Below, piece by piece: positions 10,353 to 63,879 of a stretch of 64,000 bases of DNA (within the stretch, counting starts at the first letter, position 1; each line of letters opens with the position of its first letter). Source of the DNA: Octopus sinensis (taxonomy: Eukaryota); NCBI RefSeq assembly GCF_006345805.1, contig NC_043005.1, forward strand, positions 95,542,001 to 95,606,000, read 5' to 3'. A program made the position numbers and the translations under genes. Under the pieces are notes generated by a model, which saw only the letters and a program-made list of their open reading frames with translations, was not told the DNA's origin and did no database searches.

Positions 10353-10381
10353 TTATTATTATTATTATATATATATATATA

Positions 10382-10572
10382 GGGAGAGTTTACGAAAAAA
10401 ACAAAAGACGAAGACAGGTGGTGTACAAAACAAACAGATGTATTAGTATAACGCTCAGGAATAGAAAAAGTCTTTTACGTTTCGAGCCTACGCTCTTCTA
10501 CAGAAAGGGACACAGAAAAAAAACAAGGAGAGAAAAAAATTGTGTAAGTGGCTAACGATCTGTCATGGCGAC
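10382..10572 (-). mobile_element. Penelope-like element terminal repeat fragment
   Basis: Homologous to 39085-39295 and 12490-12620; contains a hammerhead motif, a hallmark of PLE terminal repeats. Confidence 0.7.
10471..10507 (-). ncRNA. Minimal type I hammerhead ribozyme motif, CUGUAGA core variant
   Basis: Minus strand reads cttt-CTGTAGA-a-gagc-gtag-gctc-GAAAC-GT-A-aaaga: stem I, core, 4-bp stem II, palindromic ACGU stem III and a GUA cleavage triplet. Confidence 0.65.
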
Positions 10573-10574
10573 TA

Positions 10575-10616
<42 letters not shown>

Positions 10617-30929: not shown

Positions 30930-31215
30930 CGTGGCCATTGCCAGCCTCACCTGGCCCCCGTGCCGGTGGCACGTAAAAAGCACCATCTGACCATGGCCGT
31001 TTGCCAGCCCCGTCTGGCACCTGTGCCGGTGACACGTAAAAAGCACCCACTACACTCATGGAGTGGTTGGCATTAGGAAGGGCATCCAGCCGTAGAAACA
31101 TTGCCAGATCAGACTGGGCCTGGTGCAGCCTTCTGGCTTCCCAGACCCCAGTTGAACCGTCCAACCCATGCTAGCATGAAAAGCGGACGCTAAATGATGA
31201 TGATGATGATGATGA
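30930..31215 (+). mobile_element. RTE-clade LINE 3' end (5'-truncated), (GAT)n tail
   Basis: gccggtggcacgtaaaaagcacc subrepeats, ggagtggttggcattaggaagggcatccagc, and a (GAT)n tail; same family as 44684-45345. Confidence 0.8.
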
Positions 31216-34124: not shown

Positions 34125-34158
34125 AGTATACACACACACACATGTATGTGTATATATG

Positions 34159-34196
<38 letters not shown>

Positions 34197-34204
34197 TATA
34201 ATAT

Positions 34205-34258
<54 letters not shown>

Positions 34259-34259
34259 T

Positions 34260-34309
<50 letters not shown>

Positions 34310-34320
34310 TATATGTATAA

Positions 34321-34351
<31 letters not shown>

Positions 34352-34359
34352 TATAAAAA

Positions 34360-34392
<33 letters not shown>
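34125..34392. repeat. Imperfect (TA)n tract
   Basis: Directly visible. Confidence 0.95.
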
Positions 34393-34393
<1 letters not shown>

Positions 34394-34442
34394 GTGTTTA
34401 GTAACCACACTAACACTATATATATACACTAACACTAGTAAC

Positions 34443-36870
34443 CTAGTGTTTAGTAACCACACTAACACTATACATAACGTTACAGTGGAAAAAACCCTTC
34501 TTTCAGACCATGACATGGTTCTCTGTAACATGAATTCCACCAGCCGAAAGCTAATCCTAGTGACCTTCCTCCAGCCCACCCATTTGACAACATGGATCTC
34601 CATAAAGCCAACTGGGATGCAATCAGGAACGAGCTATCAAATGTTGACTGGTCCTTTACACATACACACATCTCCACCAACCATAAAACATCTTGGCAGA
34701 TCTTTGTAGACACCGTCACAGACATATGTGCAAAACACTCCCCACCAAGACCTGTGAACAAAAAGTGCAGAATCCCCCAAAACAGAAAAACCATTATCAG
34801 AAAAATAAAAAGAACAAACAAAAAATTAACAAACTAAAGTACTGCCAACAGCAACACACACACATTCGACAGCTATCGCACTGCTTGAATCCAAAAAATA
34901 TAACCTCCAACAATGCATGAAGTCCCTCATCAATAACCAAAGATCAGCTGAGGAGAAGTGGGCCATTGAAAAAATCAAACTCAACCCCAAAGTGTTCTTT
35001 TCATTTGCGAGGAACGCAGGGTCACTGTCTCCACTGTAGGCCCTCTAATTGACGAAACTGGCACTCTCCAAGATAATGCCAAATCCATGGCCGAGATACT
35101 GCAGAAACAATACTGCTCTGTTTTCAGCAATCCTGATATGGCCGATCTGGGCTGTATCAGTGATGTCAACCCCCAACACACTATATCGGACATAACGTTT
35201 AGTGCCCCTGATGTCTTAGCGGCGATAAACGAAATAAAACACAATTCAGCAGTAGGCCCCGATAGGTTCCCTGCTTGTGTCCTGAAGGTGTGTCGACACC
35301 AACTTGCATCTCCCCTTGCTAATCTGTGGAGAAACTCACTGGATGCTGGCTATATTCCAAAAAACCTTCTGTCCCAGTCTGTTGTCCCAGTTTTCAAAAA
35401 GGGAAACAAGTCCCTTGCAGTGAATTACCGTCCGATCTCACTCACCTCTCATATCATCAAGGTATTTGAGAGGGTGGTGAGATCTCAAATAACCCAATTT
35501 CTGGAAAGCAACAGACGGCTGATCTCCAACCAACATGGGTTCCGTAATGGAAGGGACTGCCTAACGCAGCTCCTGCATCACTTTGAGGACATTTTGAGAG
35601 CTTTGGAGAGGGCTCCAACACCGATGTCATCTACCTTGATTTCAGTAAGGCCTTCGACAGGGTCGATCACAAGATCCTATTGAAAAAACTATCCAACATT
35701 GGTGTCTCTGGAAGTTACTGAAATGGATTAAGTGTTTCCTGACAGACAGATCTCAACATGTTGTAGTTGAAGGGGTAAAATCAAGCCCAGCCAAAGTCAG
35801 TAGTGGCGTTCCGCAAGGCACTGTGCTGGGCCCACTTCTTTTCATCATTTACATTAATGACATTAATGACATCATCAAGCACAGCAACATAAAAATCTTT
35901 GCAGATGACTCCAAGCTACAGAAGGTCATAAATGAGGCGAGTGACCGGACATGCCTTCAGTCAGATCTACTGGCTGTTATCCAATGGGCAGAAAAAAACA
36001 ATATGCTGCTGAACGAGGATAAATTTGAGCTAATCCACTTTGGAAAAGAGGATGCCCTGAAACTCCCATACTCCCTTCCTTCAGGTGAAACTCTCACGGC
36101 GTCCAACAACATCAGAGACTTGGGAGTAATTGTGGACAACAACGTAAGCTGGGCCACTCATATAAACACCAAAGTTGACATGGCCCGCAGAATGTGTTCC
36201 TGGATTCTCAGAACTTTCCAGTCGAGAGATATCCACACCATTATCCTTCTCTTCTCCACCTTTGCCCGACCCCACCTTGAATACTGTTGTCCACTGTGGT
36301 CTCCCCACACAATACAAGGTATCATAAAAGTCGAAGCACCTCAAAGGGCAATCACAAAAAAGATAGATGGCATGACAGGCCTCGACTATTGGGGTCGACT
36401 AGAAAAGCTAAAACTCTATTCTCTCCAACGTCGTCGTGAGCGCTACATCATCTGCATGATGTGGAAAATATTCCATCAGCATTGCCCAAATGATGTTGGC
36501 ATCACCTTTAAGGTACATCCAAGGCTTGGGCCCCGTGCCATCCGCCCAAAACAAAAATCGCACTCTCATCTCATAACAACAATACGGCACAATTATTTCA
36601 CCTCAATTGGCCCCGCTCTCTTTAACATTACACCAAAACGCATTAAAACAGAAACTGACCCTATAGGGTTCAAGAAGTCTTTGGACAGATTCCTTCAAGA
36701 AATCCCGGATAAACCCCCTACACCCGGATATGTCTCTGTAAACAATAACTCTCTACTTGAGTGGGCCATAGTGCCCAAATTCTGACTTGAAAGACTTCAC
36801 CAGGTGGTGCTATTAAGTTAGACATGGCCTGGGCCAATAATGGCCGAAACCTATCAAAGTATCAAAGTAT
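34443..36870 (+). mobile_element. CR1-clade LINE, 5'-truncated (endonuclease C-terminus, RT, 3' tail)
   Basis: LVFSNH...SDHDMV at the 5' end; YRPISLTSHIIKVFE, QHGFR, YLDFSKAFD (shifted frame), SGVPQGTVLGPLLF, FADD and LYSLQRRRE; tandem TATCAAAG tail at 36852-36870. Several frameshifts. Confidence 0.95.
35823..36785 (+). CDS. CR1 ORF2 C-terminal open segment (RT palm/thumb and C-terminal region)
   Basis: 320-aa ORF LGPLLFIIYIND...FADDSKL...RDLGVIVD...PHLEYC...LYSLQRRRE. It is part of a frameshifted element, not an independent gene. Confidence 0.9.
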   Translation: MLGPLLFIIYINDINDIIKHSNIKIFADDSKLQKVINEASDRTCLQSDLLAVIQWAEKNNMLLNEDKFELIHFGKEDALKLPYSLPSGETLTASNNIRDLGVIVDNNVSWATHINTKVDMARRMCSWILRTFQSRDIHTIILLFSTFARPHLEYCCPLWSPHTIQGIIKVEAPQRAITKKIDGMTGLDYWGRLEKLKLYSLQRRRERYIICMMWKIFHQHCPNDVGITFKVHPRLGPRAIRPKQKSHSHLITTIRHNYFTSIGPALFNITPKRIKTETDPIGFKKSLDRFLQEIPDKPPTPGYVSVNNNSLLEWAIVPKF

Positions 36871-36934
36871 ATATATATATATATAAATAAATATATATAT
36901 GTATAAATATATATATATGTATAAATATATATAT

Positions 36935-36983
<49 letters not shown>

Positions 36984-37068
36984 GTATAAATATTTATATA
37001 TATATAAATAAATATATATGTGTGTATAAATATATATGTATGTATAAATATATATATATATATATATA

Positions 37069-37116
<48 letters not shown>

Positions 37117-37209
37117 TGTATATATATATATTGTATATATATACGAGTGTGTATATATATATATAATATATATACGAGTGTGTGTATGTATATATTATAT
37201 ATATGTACA
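36871..37209. repeat. Imperfect (TA)n/(TATG) tract
   Basis: Directly visible; it separates the CR1 tail from the laminin fragment. Confidence 0.95.
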
Positions 37210-37334
37210 TGTGAACCATGCAACTGTCATGGACACACAAATGCATGTGTTTACGATCCTGAAATAGATACCAAAAAGTTGTCACTGGACATACACGGAA
37301 ACTATGATGGAGGTGGCGTCTGCCAGAACTGCAA
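37210..37334 (+). CDS. LanA: Laminin alpha (LanA/LAMA3/5-type) LE-domain coding fragment; orphan, donor present, acceptor missing
   Basis: [41 protein letters not shown] closely matches the laminin alpha-3/5 LE repeat as I recall it from Drosophila LanA ([16 protein letters not shown]...[18 protein letters not shown]). Ends AA|gtatgt. Upstream is TA repeat with no polypyrimidine-AG. Confidence 0.88.
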
Positions 37335-38629
37335 GTATGTAATGGACATTATACAGTTACTCAGTATGTCTTTGTGTGTGTGTGTGGTGTGTGTGTGTGT
37401 GCATGTATGCATGTGTATGCATATATAAGCATATATATATGTGTGTGTGTGTATGTTAGAGGTATATATGTGTATGTGAATATAGACATATATATAAAGC
37501 GACTATCTCCCTTACACCGGAAGAAATCACTTATTACCTCCCCTTACCTGGAACTCTTCTTTACACTTCTTAACGAAATCATAACACAATGTTTTGAGAA
37601 ATTTGAAAAGTTAACACAAAACCGGTAATTTCTTCAAAAACTATGTCACTGTATGAGGAAAAAAAAATTTATAACATTCTTCTGACATAATGACTCAAAT
37701 ATATATTTTTTAGCCTTTTAAAACAAGCCTTCTGTAGTTTTTTCACTTTTTACTATTTTCTGTATATATATATTGTTATTATTGTTATTGTTATCATTAT
37801 TATTATTATTATTATTACTATTATTATTATTACTATTTATTATTATTCTGATCCCTAATCGTCACTCTGTTTACTATTTCAGCCTCGCCTCGTTTTGCAT
37901 ATTCTGTATAATTCATTAGTTATCGTTATAGATATTTAAGATCTCCCTTACAGGGTTGATTGAAATGGCCGCCGATTCTTCGCGGGGTGGCCACTTTCTC
38001 TCTTTCCTTCTCTCCCCCTCTTTCACATTGCTTGGACTCCTCTTCCTACTCCTCTACATGGCTATGCATTCTTAAGCTAGTAACCTGCCTCATTCTTGAC
38101 TTCGAATTCCTTTTGCCGAGTCTGTCCGTAAACGAAGTGATCCCAAGATAAGAAATCTTTGAACTTTAATTCATCCAGTATCTCTACCAGCAATATTTTC
38201 ATGCAAAATTGTCTGACCTCTAGTTGTTAATCGGTTTATTACTCATCATTATGTGCCGATAATTTCTCTATTTCTCCACCGTCCCCCCTAAATATCCCTT
38301 TATTATTATGTGCTGCGATAATTTTTGCCCGTCCAAGTCTTCGCTCTGTCCTCTATCAACCTTCGCGTATTCGCGGCGCGCCCGCCCTACCCACCCCCAC
38401 CACCAATACCGGATATCTCTATAGTTTTTTACTCCATCTATACCGGATGTCGTTTCTCCCACCACCATTATAGGTGTCTACCCTTCGAACCCCCCTCTTC
38501 AATACACTATTTCACCATACATTACCCCTCTCGTGATATCCTACGTTCTACTTGTCTAGAATCTGTCATCGTTTCTCCGAGCACCCCTCCCCACTGGTGC
38601 TCCCCTATATTCCTGCACGCCCCCCCCCC

Positions 38630-38943
38630 CCATAAAAGGCACCATCCGAACGTGGCCGATGCCAGCACCGCCCCGACTGGCTTCTGTGCAGGTGGCACAT
38701 AAAAAGCACCAACCGACCGTGGCCGATGCCAGACCCCTCTGGCACCTGTGCAGGTGGCACGTAAAAAGCACCCACTACACTCGCGGAGTGGTTGGCGTTA
38801 GGAAGGGCATCCAGCTGTGTAGAACACTGCCAGACCAGACTGGAGCCTGGGGCAGCCCCTGGCTCCCCAGACCTCGGTCGAAACCGTCCAACCCGTGCTA
38901 GCGCGGAAAACGGACGTTAAACGATGATGATGATGATGATGAT
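38630..38943 (+). mobile_element. RTE-clade LINE 3' end, CpG-intact copy
   Basis: Same family as 30930-31215, with CpGs retained (cgaacgtggccgatgcc, ctcgcggagtgg, ctcggtcgaaaccg) and a (GAT)n tail. Confidence 0.85.
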
Positions 38944-39034: not shown

Positions 39035-39084
<50 letters not shown>

Positions 39085-39089
<5 letters not shown>

Positions 39090-39295
39090 CGCCATGATAG
39101 GTCGTTAGCTCCTACACGCATTTTTTTTCTCTCGTTGTTTTTTTTCTGTGTATCTTTCTGTTGAGGAGCGTAGGCTCGAAACGTAAAAGACTTGTTCTAT
39201 TTCTATTCTGAGCACCATACTTAATACATTGTTTGTTTGTACTCCACCTGCTTCGTCTTGTGTTTGTTTTTTGTAACCTTCCCGTTATATATATA
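39085..39295 (+). mobile_element. Penelope-like element terminal repeat fragment
   Basis: Homologous to the reverse complement of 10382-10572. Confidence 0.7.
39153..39190 (+). ncRNA. Minimal type I hammerhead ribozyme motif, CUGUUGA core variant
   Basis: tcttt-CTGTTGA-g-gagc-gtag-gctc-GAAAC-GT-A-aaaga, with a perfect 5-bp stem I and 4-bp stem II. Confidence 0.65.
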
Positions 39296-39320
39296 TGTTA
39301 TAAAGAATATATATATATAT

Positions 39321-43088: not shown

Positions 43089-43465
43089 TGCTTGAGGAGA
43101 CCTATTGAGTCAAGTACACCAACATCAAAATAAATATCAAATGGAAATTGTTGTTGTGATACCTTTACCGGTGGCATGTAAAAAGCACTGTCCAAATGTG
43201 GCCAATGCCAGCACTGCCTTGACTGGCTTCTGTGCCGGTGGCACGTAAAAAGCACCAGATACCAGATTGTGGCCATTGCCAGCCTCCCCTGGCACCTGTG
43301 CACCCACTACACTCACGGAGTGGTTGGTGTTAGGAAGGGCATCCAGCTGTAGAAACACTGCCAGATCAGACTGGAGCCCGGTGCAGCCTCCTAGCTTCCC
43401 AGACCCCGGTCAAACCGTTCAACCCATGCTATCACGGAAAACGGACGTTAAACAATGATGATGAT
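43089..43465 (+). mobile_element. RTE-clade LINE 3' end
   Basis: Same family; shares the gcttgaggagacct..tgagtcaagtac...aatggaaattgt segment with 53380-53798. Confidence 0.8.
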
Positions 43466-50318: not shown

Positions 50319-50426
50319 GGAGGCTTTGCACAATGTTACGAGTTGATCGATTGCAATACAAATATAGTATACGCTGGAAAGATTATCCCGCATTCACGGA
50401 TAGCAAAAGGAAATCAAAAACAGAAG
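50319..50426 (+). CDS. PLK2: Polo-like kinase (PLK2/PLK3-type) kinase-domain exon
   Basis: tgtttcctgtctttgcag|[36 protein letters not shown]|gtgagt; 108 nt, phase 0/0. Contains the glycine-rich loop end and the catalytic Lys. KIIPHSR is PLK2-like rather than PLK1 (KIVPKS). The subfamily call is less certain than the family call. Confidence 0.88.
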
Positions 50427-51029: not shown

Positions 51030-51295
51030 CTTCCTAAGATCTTCCTGTGTGGTTTAAGAAGCTAGCTTTGTAAACACATGGCTTCAGGTTCCGTTGTATT
51101 GTGTGGCACTTTGGGCAAGTATCTTGTCCTATCAGCCCTAGGCTGACCAATGCATTGGGAATGAATTTGATAGAGAGAAAACAGTGCAAACCTCTGTGCG
51201 CATGTGTGTGCGTGTGTGTGTTCTATTGTGAGTGCTGAATTGTAAGAAATAGGCTCCCAGTTAAGTAAGTTTTAAGATTGGTTTCCCTTTCATCA

Positions 51296-51625
51296 TCATC
51301 ATCATCATCATTTAATGTCCGCTTTCCATGCTAGCATGGGTTGGACGATTTGACTGAGGTCTGGTGAACCAGACTCCAATCTGATCTGGCAGAGTTTCTA
51401 CAGCTGGATGCCCTTCCTAATGCCAACCACTCCAAGAGTGTAGTGGGTGCTTTTACATGCCACCAGCATGGGGCCAGTTTAGTGGTACTGGCAACGGCCA
51501 TGCCCAAATGGTGCTTTTTACGTGCCACCTGCACAGGAGCCAGTCCAGCAGCACTGGCGACGACCTCGCTCGAATGTTTCACATGCCACCAGCACAAGTG
51601 CTAGTAAGGCAACACGGTAATGATC
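51296..51625 (-). mobile_element. RTE-clade LINE 3' end
   Basis: (ATC)n followed by the reverse complement of the family 3' UTR. Confidence 0.8.
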
Positions 51626-53379: not shown

Positions 53380-53798
53380 TGAAGGCCTTGACTGGCTTCT
53401 GTGCCAGTGGTACATGACCTGCTGTGCTTGAGGAGACCTACTGAGTCAAGTACATCAACATCAAAATAAATATCAAATGGAAATTGTAGTTGTGATACCT
53501 GTGCCAAGCACCATCTGAATGTGGCCAATGCCAGCACTGCCTTGACTGGCTTCTGTGCCGGTGGCACGTAAAAAGCACCAACCGATCATGGCCACTGCCA
53601 GCTTACCCTGGTACCTGTGCCAGTGGCACGTAAAAACACTCATGGAGTGGCTGGCGTTAGGAAGGGCATCCAGCTGTAGAAACACTGCCAGATCAGACTG
53701 GAGCCTGGTGCAGCCTCCTGGCTTCCCAGACCCCGGTCGAACCATCCAACCCATGCTAGAAAACGGATGCTAAACAATGCTGATGATGATGATGATGA
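53380..53798 (+). mobile_element. RTE-clade LINE 3' end
   Basis: Family 3' UTR with subrepeats and a (GAT)n tail. Confidence 0.8.
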
Positions 53799-56111: not shown

Positions 56112-56622
56112 CAAGGGTTCTCAACCATTTTTCATCTATAGACCCCTTTGATTAGTATTTTTTTCTAGTGGACCCCACCATAGTTATTTGGTGTTTAAAA
56201 ACTAGTTTTATAGATTCTTCTTTCAAAATTCCTGTTTTGTTTTTCACACATTAACTTGTGCGGGTTGAACTATATAAAAGAAAGAAACCTAGCTGTTTCT
56301 TGCATTAAATGCCAGCCATGCCGGTGGCACGTAAAAAGCACCCACTACACTCTCGGAGTGGTTGGCGTTAGGAAGGGCATCCAGCTGTAGAAACTCTGCC
56401 GGATCAAAATTGGAGCCTGGTGCAGCCATCTGGTTCGCCAGCCCTCATTCAAACCGTCCAACCCATGCTAGCATGGAAAGCGGACGTTAAACGATGATGA
56501 TGACATATATTTAAAGTAAAGTTTTTTCAGGGGTCCTTAAAATATTATTGTGGATCTCCAGTTTACTATTTTGTTATATGGATCCCCCAAAATTTTATAT
56601 GGACCCCAGTTGAGAACCACTG
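56112..56622. mobile_element. hAT-type MITE
   Basis: TIRs CAAGGGTTCTCAAC and GTTGAGAACCACTG, with tttagca duplicated on both sides. Confidence 0.75.
56311..56503 (+). mobile_element. RTE-clade LINE 3' end inserted in the hAT MITE
   Basis: gccggtggcacgtaaaaagcaccc...cggacgttaaacgatgatgatga. Confidence 0.85.
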
Positions 56623-62389: not shown

Positions 62390-62768
62390 GGTGCTGAGAG
62401 CACCATCTGAGCGTGATCATTGCCAGAGTGGCTAACTGGCTTCCGTGCCGGTGGCATGTAGGAAGCACCATTCAAGCGGGATTGTTACCAGCATTGCCTT
62501 ACTGGCACCTGTGCCATTGACATGTGTAAAAAAAAAAAATTCGAGCAAGGTCGTTGCCAGTACCGCCTGACTGGCCCCCGTGCCGGTGGCACATAAAAGC
62601 ACCCACTACACTCTTGGAGTGGTTGGTGTTAGGAAGGGCAACCAGCTGTAGAAACTCTGCCAGATCAAGATTGGAGCCTGGTGCAGCCATCTGGTTCGCC
62701 AGCCCTCAGTCAAACCGTCCAACCCATGCTAGCATGGAAAGCGGTCGTTAAACAATGATGATGATGAT
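62390..62768 (+). mobile_element. RTE-clade LINE 3' end
   Basis: Family 3' UTR, nearly identical at its 3' end to 56311-56503. Confidence 0.8.
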
Positions 62769-63879
62769 AGTGTATATAGTGAAGGCACATGGCTTCATAG
62801 TTAAGGTATTCGGCTCATGATTGTAAGGTCGTGAGTTCAATTCCAGCAGCATGTTGTGTCCTTGAGAAAGACACTTTATTATATGTTGCTTCAGTCTACT
62901 CAGCTGGCAAAAATACGTGGTGCCTGTATTTCAGGTGCCAAGCTGAATCTCCTTGAGAACTACGTGAAGGGTATGCATGTCTGTGGAGTTCTCAGCCACT
63001 TGCAGGTTAATTTCACAAGCAGGCTGTTCTGTTGATCGGATCCACAGGAACCATCATCTTCATAAATGACAGAGTGTTTTTTCAAAGTTGCTATTAAAAT
63101 TTGGAATAAAACCACAGATTACAAAGAAAGGAGAGAGTTAAAAGCTGATCAACACAAAGATAGACTGATGGATGGGTGGGCAGTGTTGGGAGTAAAATGC
63201 AACATTTAATACAATGAAAAGAATTGGGTTGATTTTCAAAAGCTTGATGGAAATGTAATTAGCAATTAAATAGAACTAAATAGGTTTGTTTCTGTGACAA
63301 CAATTGGATATATTTTTTTTAATGAGTATTTTTGTTACCCTGTAACCCAATTTCTTCTTATGTCCCTGTTGCCAATTTGCAGATCAGGAAAGTATTAGCT
63401 GTTACACATGACAATAATAAAACAAACAAACTGAATTCCAGTTAGAAGTTTTTAGATTAGTTTCAAGGAAATGTCGCTTGGTATGTTTTCATTTGTTCTA
63501 GCCATTAGACTGCCCATGCTAGAGCACTACCTTGAGGGGATTTAGTTGAATAAATTAACCCAAGTACTTTTTTTTTAAGTAGTATTTATTCATTCATTTG
63601 GCCTCTTGTGCATGCTGCTAAGTTAGGAAGATGTAAACAAACAAACATTGGTTGTCAAGTGGGAACAAACACGATGCAGATATATATATGTATGTGTGTA
63701 TGTGTATATATATATACACATGATGGTTTCCTCAGTTTCCTTCTATCAAATTTCTCCTACAAGGCATTAATCATCCTTCCCTTAGGTGCTGCACAGTGGA
63801 ACCCAAACCTATGTGGTTTCAAAGTGAGCTTCTTTACCACACAGCCATAACTGTGCCTTATGTATGTTTTATATATATA

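What the first reader, a model, noticed from the sequence alone, without database searches (positions are those of the whole stretch)
37210..37334. Orphan laminin-alpha exon: intact frame and donor, decapitated by TA repeat, no sister exons in 64 kb
Seen: 41 intact codons with all LE cysteines and a gtatgt donor, fused at the 5' side directly to (TA)n 340 bp after the CR1 tail. The nearest AG (37177) has no pyrimidine tract and would add a non-laminin peptide. I found no LN-domain or other LE exon on either strand. It lies on the same strand as, and 13 kb upstream of, the PLK exon. Inference: either (i) a genomic fragment captured from the laminin locus (repair patch or LINE-associated transduction) into a probable PLK intron, i.e. 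raw material for exon shuffling, or (ii) a mis-join through TA repeats.
Basis: partly seen in the sequence, partly recalled or inferred. Interest (0 to 1): 0.7.

Follow-up and report, generated by a model that had tools for sequence, protein, structure and literature searches.

The report
Stray laminin gene snippet in octopus PLK1 intron
A pristine 126-base piece of laminin-alpha coding sequence sits alone inside a microsatellite in the giant first intron of the octopus PLK1 gene; it looks like a small copied-in patch, not a working exon, so it is an ordinary genomic scar whose source gene is still unknown.

Summary
Window 37210-37335 (+) encodes 42 residues that match the start of laminin-alpha LE2 (PDB 2Y38, E 6.8e-9). 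In a 69-protein profile search it is the only laminin hit in 64 kb (E 7.8e-24).

The window is Octopus. The "PLK exon" at 50319-50426 is PLK1 exon 2, identical to O. sinensis and O. bimaculoides. No other PLK1 exon is present, so the piece lies in PLK1 intron 1.

- The annotated laminin-alpha gene is on another chromosome and is only 29/42 identical.
- The orthologous intron of Argonauta hians lacks the piece.

It is not a normal exon. In two gastropods, a nemertean and a hemichordate, the upstream exon ends TGY GAA C|gt and this exon ends in a phase-0 gt. The window instead reads TGTGAAC fused directly to CATGC, with no acceptor, and its GT sits one base early. About 160 unique bases are embedded in a compound TA/TG microsatellite, with a 15-nt array motif running into the first Cys codon.

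Best reading: a templated repair patch, probably from a partly spliced transcript. Capture from an intron-lacking paralogue is the main rival. LINE transduction and mis-join are not supported. The source gene is unidentified. Interest is low to moderate.

The parts
37210..37335 (+). Laminin-alpha (LanA / alpha3,5-type) coding piece: the last Cys of LE1 plus Cys1-5 of LE2. It has 42 codons, no stop, and every conserved residue is kept.
37213..37216 (+). GAAC: the Glu codon plus the first base of the Pro codon. In Lottia, Plakobranchus, Tubulanus and Saccoglossus these bases end the upstream exon (TGY GAA C|gt). Here they are fused directly to CATGC with no intron and no AG.
   Evidence: 79 of 107 genomic ORF fragments from other animals lose homology at this codon
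37198..37212 (+). The 15-nt motif TATATATGTACATGT is an exact second copy of 37105-37119 in the TA array. It runs into the first Cys codon, which gives 3-6 nt of overlap (microhomology) at the 5' junction.
36868..37209 (.). (TA)n array on the left flank. It becomes degenerate TA/TG near the junction.
37336..37366 (+). 31 unique bases (tatgtaatggacattatacagttactcag) follow the last codon. They look like an intron start that has lost its first G. A second, phase-0 GT lies at 37339 (TAT|gtaatg).
37367..37495 (.). Compound (TG)n/(TA)n microsatellite on the right flank. The roughly 160-nt unique island (37207-37366) is therefore embedded in simple repeats on both sides.
34396..36867 (+). 5'-truncated non-LTR retrotransposon (LINE). 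Pfam RVT_1 is split over two ORFs with internal stops, and the tail is (TATCAAAG)2. It is inserted in the same TA array. The CR1 clade assignment was not tested.
34150..34395 (.). (TA)n array on the 5' side of the LINE, probably the other half of the array that the LINE split.
50319..50426 (+). PLK1 exon 2 (residues 79-114). It has a strong pyrimidine tract with cag, the donor AAG|gtgagt, and phase 0 at both ends. It defines window 1-50318 as PLK1 intron 1.

Best explanation
The piece is not an exon of a laminin gene at this locus. It is a short templated patch of about 130-160 bp. The patch was copied into a compound TA/TG microsatellite inside the giant first intron of Octopus PLK1.

Inferred mechanism:
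- A break occurred in the fragile TA/TG tract.
- It was sealed by end joining, with a few bases of microhomology, using a copy of a laminin-alpha (LanA-type) transcript.
- In that transcript the upstream intron had already been spliced out and the downstream intron was still present.
- This corresponds to a class-2 templated sequence insertion, a cDNA patch.

As it stands the piece has no acceptor, and its stronger donor is out of frame with PLK1 exon 2. It is most likely inert.

Shown: identity of the piece, its isolation, its location in PLK1 intron 1, the intron-less 5' junction, the off-by-one donor, the microsatellite embedding, and absence from Argonauta.

Inferred: the RNA template, break repair, and a recent origin from an unidentified parent gene.

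The confidence of 0.5 is for the whole statement including the RNA template. That the piece is an orphan, non-functional fragment and not part of a laminin gene here I put at about 0.85.
For: - Identity and isolation.
- Octopus PLK1 intron 1: exon 2 is 100% identical to O. sinensis and O. bimaculoides PLK1, and no other PLK1 exon is in the window. The gene ranges are 147 and 153 kb, with no other gene called in them. In Argonauta, exon 1 is a single exon covering residues 1-77.
- Unlinked annotated laminin alpha: it spans 249 kb on a different contig of the same O. bimaculoides assembly, 96.88 Mb against 94.60 Mb.
- Spliced junction: four annotated laminin-alpha genes from three phyla have ...TGY GAA C|gt ... 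ag|CN TGY ... and a phase-0 gt after codon 42. The window reads TGTGAAC-CATGC with no AG.
- Across other animals, 79 of 107 genomic ORF fragments break at that codon. Of 117 with right-hand context, 66 read V (GT) straight after codon 42 and none reads Y as the window does.
- Embedding and microhomology: a unique island at 37207-37366 lies between purine/pyrimidine-alternating repeats, and a 15-nt array motif is repeated at the junction.
- No poly(A) or LINE-type tail follows the piece.
- The piece is absent from the 15.7-kb orthologous intron, and from the whole 35-kb PLK locus, of Argonauta hians.
- Known precedent: class-2 templated insertions use spliced cDNAs and intronic RNA as templates and show microhomology, with no target-site duplication and no poly(A) (PMC5110952).
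Against: - The laminin-only sequence upstream of the canonical exon start is just 4 nt (GAAC). The preceding TGT can also be read as array sequence. The 'spliced' inference therefore rests on few bases.
- The intron has not been checked in any Octopus laminin gene, because no DNA is returned for genes longer than 100 kb.
- Some genomic-looking fragments keep CCPGF..KKW-type (LanA-like) upstream sequence, with no break at codon 3, and read GT straight after codon 42, for example P0016 and P0019. A DNA copy from such a parent would look the same.
- No parent was found. The annotated Octopus gene is only 69% identical, although the piece shows no decay.
- The empty site is not demonstrable, because the Octopus and Argonauta introns do not align.
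- Target-site duplications cannot be scored in microsatellite sequence.
Confidence: 0.5

Rival explanations
1. DNA-level capture. The piece is a fragment of genomic DNA: the 3' part of an exon plus the start of the following intron. It came from a second laminin-alpha gene that lacks the CE|PC intron, and it was pasted or duplicated into the microsatellite. The 5' break would lie inside that larger exon.
For: - The 3' flank looks like an intron start minus one G.
- Some genomic fragments keep the LE1-LE2 junction uninterrupted but read GT after codon 42. Examples are P0016 and P0019 with CCPGF..KKW-type (LanA-like) upstream sequence, and many with CCP[LM][YF]NQ-type (alpha1,2-like) upstream sequence.
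- The parent is evidently not the annotated Octopus laminin alpha.
Against: - All four laminin-alpha genes examined at the DNA level have the intron, including both molluscs.
- The piece is closest to LanA-type sequences, at 76-83%, and only about 64-66% to the alpha1,2-like fragments.
- No such second gene turned up in the searches that could be run.
Confidence: 0.25
2. Functional or nascent exon. Either it is an exon of an unannotated laminin-like gene interleaved with PLK1, or it is an alternative first exon of PLK1. In the second case, ATG 37186 and the phase-0 donor TAT|gtaatg at 37339 would splice in frame to exon 2.
For: - The piece is as well conserved as the best real LE2 segments.
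- An open frame runs from ATG 37186, and an in-frame fusion to PLK1 exon 2 is possible through the second GT.
- It has the same orientation as PLK1.
Against: - There is no acceptor, and the only AG within 60 nt has no pyrimidine tract.
- The stronger donor (CAA|gtatgt) gives a stop nine codons into exon 2.
- The LE domain is incomplete, and no exon encodes the rest within 26 kb.
- Neither Octopus annotation has another gene model in that range.
- The piece is absent from Argonauta intron 1.
- A fusion protein would lack the first glycine of the kinase P-loop. This is an inference from PLK1 residues 72-84.
Confidence: 0.07
3. Assembly or read artefact: a mis-join or chimeric consensus in the TA/TG repeats placed a foreign fragment here.
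For: - Low-complexity repeats flank the island on both sides.
- The one-base anomaly at the donor could be a homopolymer indel error.
- No second copy of the locus could be inspected.
Against: - There are no N gaps in the window.
- A mis-join of two TA arrays cannot create an intron-less TGTGAAC-CATGC junction or place exon sequence flush against the array.
- The piece and PLK1 exon 2 lie on the same side of the array.
Confidence: 0.08
4. LINE-mediated event: 3' transduction, or reverse-transcriptase template switching, by the retrotransposon at 34396-36867.
For: - A same-strand LINE ends 340 bp upstream.
- LINE reverse transcriptase can act in trans on other RNAs (PMC5110952).
Against: - A 307-bp TA array separates the LINE tail from the piece, and TA also flanks the LINE's 5' end. 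The LINE therefore inserted into a pre-existing array.
- Template switching would place captured RNA at the LINE's 5' end, not after its 3' tail. This follows from the established target-primed reverse transcription mechanism.
- No tail follows the piece.
- The LINE is decayed, with internal stops, while the piece is pristine.
Confidence: 0.07

Closest known systems
Class-2 templated sequence insertions (cDNA or RNA-templated patches at double-strand breaks; Onozawa et al., reviewed in PMC5110952)
   Same: - A short insert copied from an unlinked gene.
- It crosses an exon-exon junction and also carries intron-like sequence.
- There is microhomology at a junction and no poly(A).
- No LINE endonuclease signature is recognisable.
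   Different: - These insertions were described in human cells and human polymorphisms. Here the case is a fixed or assembled allele in a cephalopod.
- The donor has not been identified.
- The empty site has not been shown.
- The insertion lies inside a microsatellite, so the junction features are ambiguous.
Processed pseudogene or retrocopy fragment (LINE-mediated)
   Same: Coding sequence that lacks an intron found in related genes, at an ectopic locus, with no promoter or neighbouring exons of its own.
   Different: - It is an internal snippet of roughly 130 nt from the 5' third of an mRNA encoding about 3,600 aa (over 10 kb of coding sequence).
- It has no 3' end and no poly(A).
- It stops at an exon boundary and continues as intron-like sequence.
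The bona fide LE2 exon of laminin-alpha genes (Lottia, Plakobranchus, Tubulanus, Saccoglossus)
   Same: It has the same 119-nt coding content, the same reading frame and the same conserved residues.
   Different: - There is no acceptor, and the upstream-exon bases are fused on directly.
- The GT is displaced by 1 nt.
- Neighbouring exons lie 0.2-2 kb away in those genes. None is found within 26-37 kb here.
LINE 3' transduction and exon shuffling (Moran-type, from general knowledge)
   Same: A LINE lies next to a foreign exon-like piece in an intron of another gene, in the same orientation.
   Different: The piece is neither contiguous with the LINE tail nor followed by a new tail. The LINE appears to be an independent insertion into the same TA array.

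Membership tests
Laminin-alpha LE2 exon (functional) | Sequence homology to the LE1/LE2 boundary of laminin alpha, with the conserved Cys/Gly/His pattern | tested here: met
   It scores 93.1 bits against a median of 88.5 for real proteins, and 17 of 17 highly conserved columns are kept.
Laminin-alpha LE2 exon (functional) | AG acceptor at the conserved phase-1 position inside the Pro/Ala codon (ag|CN TGY) | tested here: not met
   The window has GAAC, not NCAG, before CATGC. The nearest AG is 37177-78.
Laminin-alpha LE2 exon (functional) | GT donor in phase 0 directly after codon 42 | tested here: not met
   The window reads AAG|tatgta. GT occurs at 37335 (phase 2) and 37339 (phase 0, one codon late).
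Laminin-alpha LE2 exon (functional) | Sister exons (LN, LE1, the rest of LE2) on the same strand nearby | tested here: not met
   None was found in 64 kb by tblastn or by profile search. The annotated gene is on another contig.
Complete LE (laminin EGF-like) domain | Eight cysteines, including C5-x5-G-x2-C6 and C7/C8 | tested here: not met
   Only C1-C5 of LE2 are present. Pfam EGF_laminin gives no hit.
Class-2 templated sequence insertion (repair patch) | A short insert templated from a distant locus or transcript | tested here: inconclusive
   The piece is ectopic and unlinked to the annotated laminin gene. The donor itself was not found.
Class-2 templated sequence insertion (repair patch) | Junction microhomology, with no poly(A) and no target-site duplication | tested here: inconclusive
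   There are 3-6 nt of overlap at the 5' junction (a 15-nt array motif) and no poly(A). Target-site duplication cannot be scored in microsatellite sequence.
Class-2 templated sequence insertion (repair patch) | Evidence of an RNA template (the insert lacks an intron of the donor) | tested here: inconclusive
   The junction TGTGAAC-CATGC lacks the intron present in four of four related genes examined. The Octopus donor's structure is unknown.
Class-2 templated sequence insertion (repair patch) | An empty site in relatives or in other alleles | tested here: inconclusive
   The piece is absent from Argonauta PLK intron 1, but the introns are not alignable. DNA for the other Octopus species could not be obtained.
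LINE-mediated processed pseudogene | A 3'-anchored copy with a poly(A) or LINE tail and target-site duplication | tested here: not met
   It is an internal mRNA snippet with no tail.
LINE 3' transduction | The transduced segment is contiguous with the LINE 3' end and is followed by a new tail | tested here: not met
   A 307-bp TA array intervenes, TA also flanks the LINE's 5' end, and no tail follows the piece.
Cassette or alternative exon of PLK1 | Usable splice sites and frame compatibility with exon 2 (phase 0) | tested here: not met
   There is no credible acceptor. Donor 37334 gives a frameshift and a stop. Only the weaker donor at 37338 is in frame. Expression was not testable here.

The most novel reading that the evidence does not exclude
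The piece is exon shuffling caught at birth. A consensus-grade laminin LE half-domain was recently copied from a still-unannotated second LanA-type gene of Octopus. It sits in the sense orientation in PLK1 intron 1, behind a TATA-rich TA array. It has an ATG at 37186 and a phase-0 GT at 37339 that would join in frame to PLK1 exon 2. It could therefore already be used as an alternative first exon, or be under selection, rather than being an inert scar.
Probability: 0.05. Interest if true: 0.65.

Novelty: new member of a known kind. Interest (0 to 1): 0.3.

Why it matters
If the reading is right, this is a clean germline example outside mammals of a break in a fragile microsatellite being patched with a copy of a partly spliced transcript. 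That process scatters exon-sized coding modules into the introns of other genes and so supplies raw material for exon shuffling.

On the practical side, it warns annotators of cephalopod genomes that isolated, perfect-looking exon matches inside giant introns can be patches rather than missed exons.

It also flags that Octopus may have, or may recently have had, a second LanA-type laminin gene that the annotated gene set does not explain.

Tried and rejected
- Pfam on the 42-aa peptide and on the 93-aa ORF gave no hit, as expected for a half-domain.
- I searched for the same sequence or a close copy elsewhere.
  - A word-index search restricted to the piece, with full-length candidates, gave 83% identity at best and no Octopus protein. 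That search also missed the real Octopus laminin, so its negative result is weak.
  - Short-ORF candidates reached 70% at best.
  - The JGI metagenome scan reached 72% at best.
- Genomic DNA for Octopus PLK1 and laminin alpha could not be fetched, because the gene ranges exceed 100 kb. The orthologous intron in other Octopus species and the donor's exon structure therefore stayed untested.
- Motif regexes for further PLK or laminin exons found only the known exon 2.
- A U12-type (AT-AC) acceptor at gtac|a was rejected. No branch-site-like sequence lies upstream, only TA repeat (read).
- The AG at 37177 was considered as acceptor. It would give a 156-nt exon with phase 2 at both ends, but it adds [10 protein letters not shown] encoded by microsatellite, has no pyrimidine tract, and is out of frame with PLK1 intron 1, which is phase 0.
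- A repeated transposable element carrying the piece was rejected for this window. 37336-38630 has no other copy in the window.
- An arthropod origin was considered because the best identities are to insects. It was rejected as over-reading, because the piece is simply close to the family consensus and a lophotrochozoan transcript (P0155) is 79% identical.
- Scans for tRNAs and Rfam families found nothing.
- A literature search on cephalopod laminin paralogues found nothing useful.

Full report
**What is there**

Window 37210-37335 (+) is an open 42-codon stretch, [42 protein letters not shown].
- It aligns over its whole length to residues 322-363 of the solved laminin alpha-5 LN-LE1-2 fragment 2Y38 (E 6.8e-9). 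That places it at the last Cys of LE1 plus Cys1-5 of LE2.
- An exhaustive phmmer run over 1.84 billion proteins gave 330 hits, the best at 7.9e-17. The named full-length hits are laminin alpha chains of the LanA / alpha3,5 type, including Drosophila laminin A and many insect 'laminin subunit alpha' entries.
- On a profile built from 83 real LE2 segments the piece scores 93.1 bits. The median is 88.5 and it beats 74 of the 83. All 17 columns conserved at 90% or more are kept.
- So the coding observation is real, and the piece shows no decay.
- It is only half an LE domain, and Pfam EGF_laminin does not fire.

**Isolation**

- tblastn with 23 long laminin alphas found nothing else on either strand.
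- hmmsearch --max with a profile of 69 full-length laminin alphas, run against all 3344 six-frame pieces of the window, found the piece at E 7.8e-24. The next best E was 0.6.
- The profile alignment starts at 37201-37207 and ends at 37335-37338.

**Where the window comes from**

- The 'PLK exon' at 50319-50426 has a textbook pyrimidine tract with cag, and the donor AAG|gtgagt. It matches PLK kinase domains in the PDB.
- A search restricted to this exon returned PLK1 of Octopus sinensis, O. bimaculoides and Argonauta hians. The exon is 100% identical to residues 79-114 of both Octopus proteins.
- No other PLK1 exon is in the window.
- In Argonauta, residues 1-77 are one exon and intron 1 is 15.7 kb. 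Window 1-50318 is therefore PLK1 intron 1, and the rest of the window is intron 2.
- The Octopus PLK1 genes span 147 and 153 kb, and no other gene is called in or within 10 kb of that range. The Argonauta gene spans 31 kb.
- The real Octopus laminin alpha (O. vulgaris CAI9728190.1, O. bimaculoides XP_052826867.1) spans 249 kb on a different chromosome-scale contig of the same O. bimaculoides assembly.

**Why it is not a normal exon**

I fetched the annotated laminin-alpha genes of two gastropods (Lottia, Plakobranchus), a nemertean (Tubulanus) and a hemichordate (Saccoglossus), and read their exon borders.
- In all four, the upstream exon ends ...TGY GAA C|gt (phase 1, inside the Pro/Ala codon).
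- The LE2 exon starts ag|CN TGY and ends in a phase-0 gt directly after codon 42.
- The next exon starts with CAY/GAY AAY AC.
- The same borders show up in unlabelled genomic ORF fragments from many animals. Of 107 with left-hand context, 79 lose homology exactly at codon 3. Of 117 with right-hand context, 66 read V (GT) straight after codon 42, and none reads Y as the window does.

The window reads ...ACA TGT GAA C-CA TGC AAC TGT...
- The last bases of the upstream exon are fused to the LE2 exon with no intron and no AG.
- After the last codon it reads AAG tatgtaatgg. GT is one base early (CAA|gtatgt, phase 2), and a second GT lies one codon late (TAT|gtaatg, phase 0).
- The nearest upstream AG (37177-78) has no pyrimidine tract and would add a peptide encoded by microsatellite.
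- 'Decapitated' is therefore the wrong picture. The canonical exon is complete and slightly over-complete at its 5' end.

**Setting**

- The unique island runs from about 37207 to 37366. It consists of the piece plus 31 nt of intron-like sequence.
- On the left lies a (TA)n array (36868-37174, degenerate to 37209). On the right lies compound (TG)n/(TA)n up to about 37495.
- The 15-nt motif TATATATGTACATGT occurs at 37105 within the array and again at 37198-37212, where it overlaps the first Cys codon. The 5' junction therefore has 3-6 nt of possible microhomology, and strictly laminin-only sequence begins at GAAC, 37213.
- No poly(A) or other tail follows the piece.
- The LINE at 34396-36867 has RVT_1 in two ORFs with internal stops. 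It has TA arrays on both sides. It looks like an independent insertion into the same array, not the carrier of the piece.
- The 1.3 kb downstream of the island has no other copy in the window.

**Age and source**

- The piece is absent from the whole 35-kb PLK locus of Argonauta hians. The best tblastn E was 3 and the best profile E was 1.3. The introns do not align, so a true empty site is not shown.
- The piece is 29/42 identical to the annotated Octopus laminin alpha. That gene differs by only 1/42 between O. vulgaris and O. bimaculoides, which split about 34 My ago (PMC10700109).
- The piece is 31-35/42 identical to insect, hemichordate and nemertean LanA. This is because it sits close to the family consensus.
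- A neutral relic of the annotated gene would not drift towards the consensus. The recent source must therefore be another gene, which I could not find with the searches available. This remains the one puzzling point.

**Mechanism**

- The best fit is a templated repair patch. A break in the TA/TG tract was sealed with a short copy of a laminin-alpha-type transcript, in which the upstream intron was already spliced out and the downstream intron was still present.
- This matches class-2 templated sequence insertions. Those use spliced cDNAs and intronic RNA as templates and show microhomology without target-site duplication or poly(A) (PMC5110952).
- The main rival is DNA capture from a paralogue that lacks the CE|PC intron. 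Such gene structures exist in some animals, for example P0016 and P0019.
- LINE 3' transduction and template switching do not fit the geometry.
- A mis-join through TA repeats cannot produce an intron-less junction. It can only be formally excluded with reads.
- Functional use is unlikely. There is no acceptor. Donor 37334 joined to exon 2 gives a stop after nine codons. Only the weaker donor at 37338 would be in frame.

**Verdict**

The piece is an ordinary kind of genomic scar: a new member of a known kind. It comes with a neat diagnostic, the conserved exon borders, and one open question, the missing donor gene.

Noticed in passing
window 50319-50426 (+), and the whole window: The 64-kb window contains a single genuine exon, PLK1 exon 2. 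Octopus PLK1 spans 147-153 kb, against 31 kb in Argonauta hians. That is roughly a five-fold intron expansion for a 645-aa protein.
   Followed up: partly
window 34150-34395, 34396-36867, 36868-37174: A 5'-truncated, decayed LINE (RVT_1) with a (TATCAAAG)2 tail sits between two (TA)n arrays, as if it had inserted into a TA microsatellite. Target preference was not examined.
   Followed up: partly
window 30930-31215, 38633-38943, 43179-43465, 51290-51545(-), 53508-53796, 56319-56503, 62549-62778; L011 26191-26345, 27344-27487, 28695-28847: An interspersed repeat of about 300 bp is present in at least seven copies in the window (78-87% identity). It also occurs in the Argonauta PLK locus (70-77%), so it is an old octopod-wide element. 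It was not classified.
   Followed up: no
window 38631-38772: A 67-bp tandem repeat (2.2 copies, 85% identity) lies at the 5' end of one copy of that interspersed repeat.
   Followed up: no
window 39049-39303 and 10362-10611 (-): Another repeat pair in inverted orientation, about 84% identical and 29 kb apart. Its family is unidentified.
   Followed up: no
proteins P0007/P0247: The region-restricted word-index search did not return the real Octopus laminin alpha, although that protein shares several 5-mers with the query and lies within the length range. Negative results from that kind of search should be treated as weak.
   Followed up: partly
window 1-64000: No tRNA gene and no Rfam family reaches threshold anywhere in the window, despite many SINE-like repeats.
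   Followed up: yes
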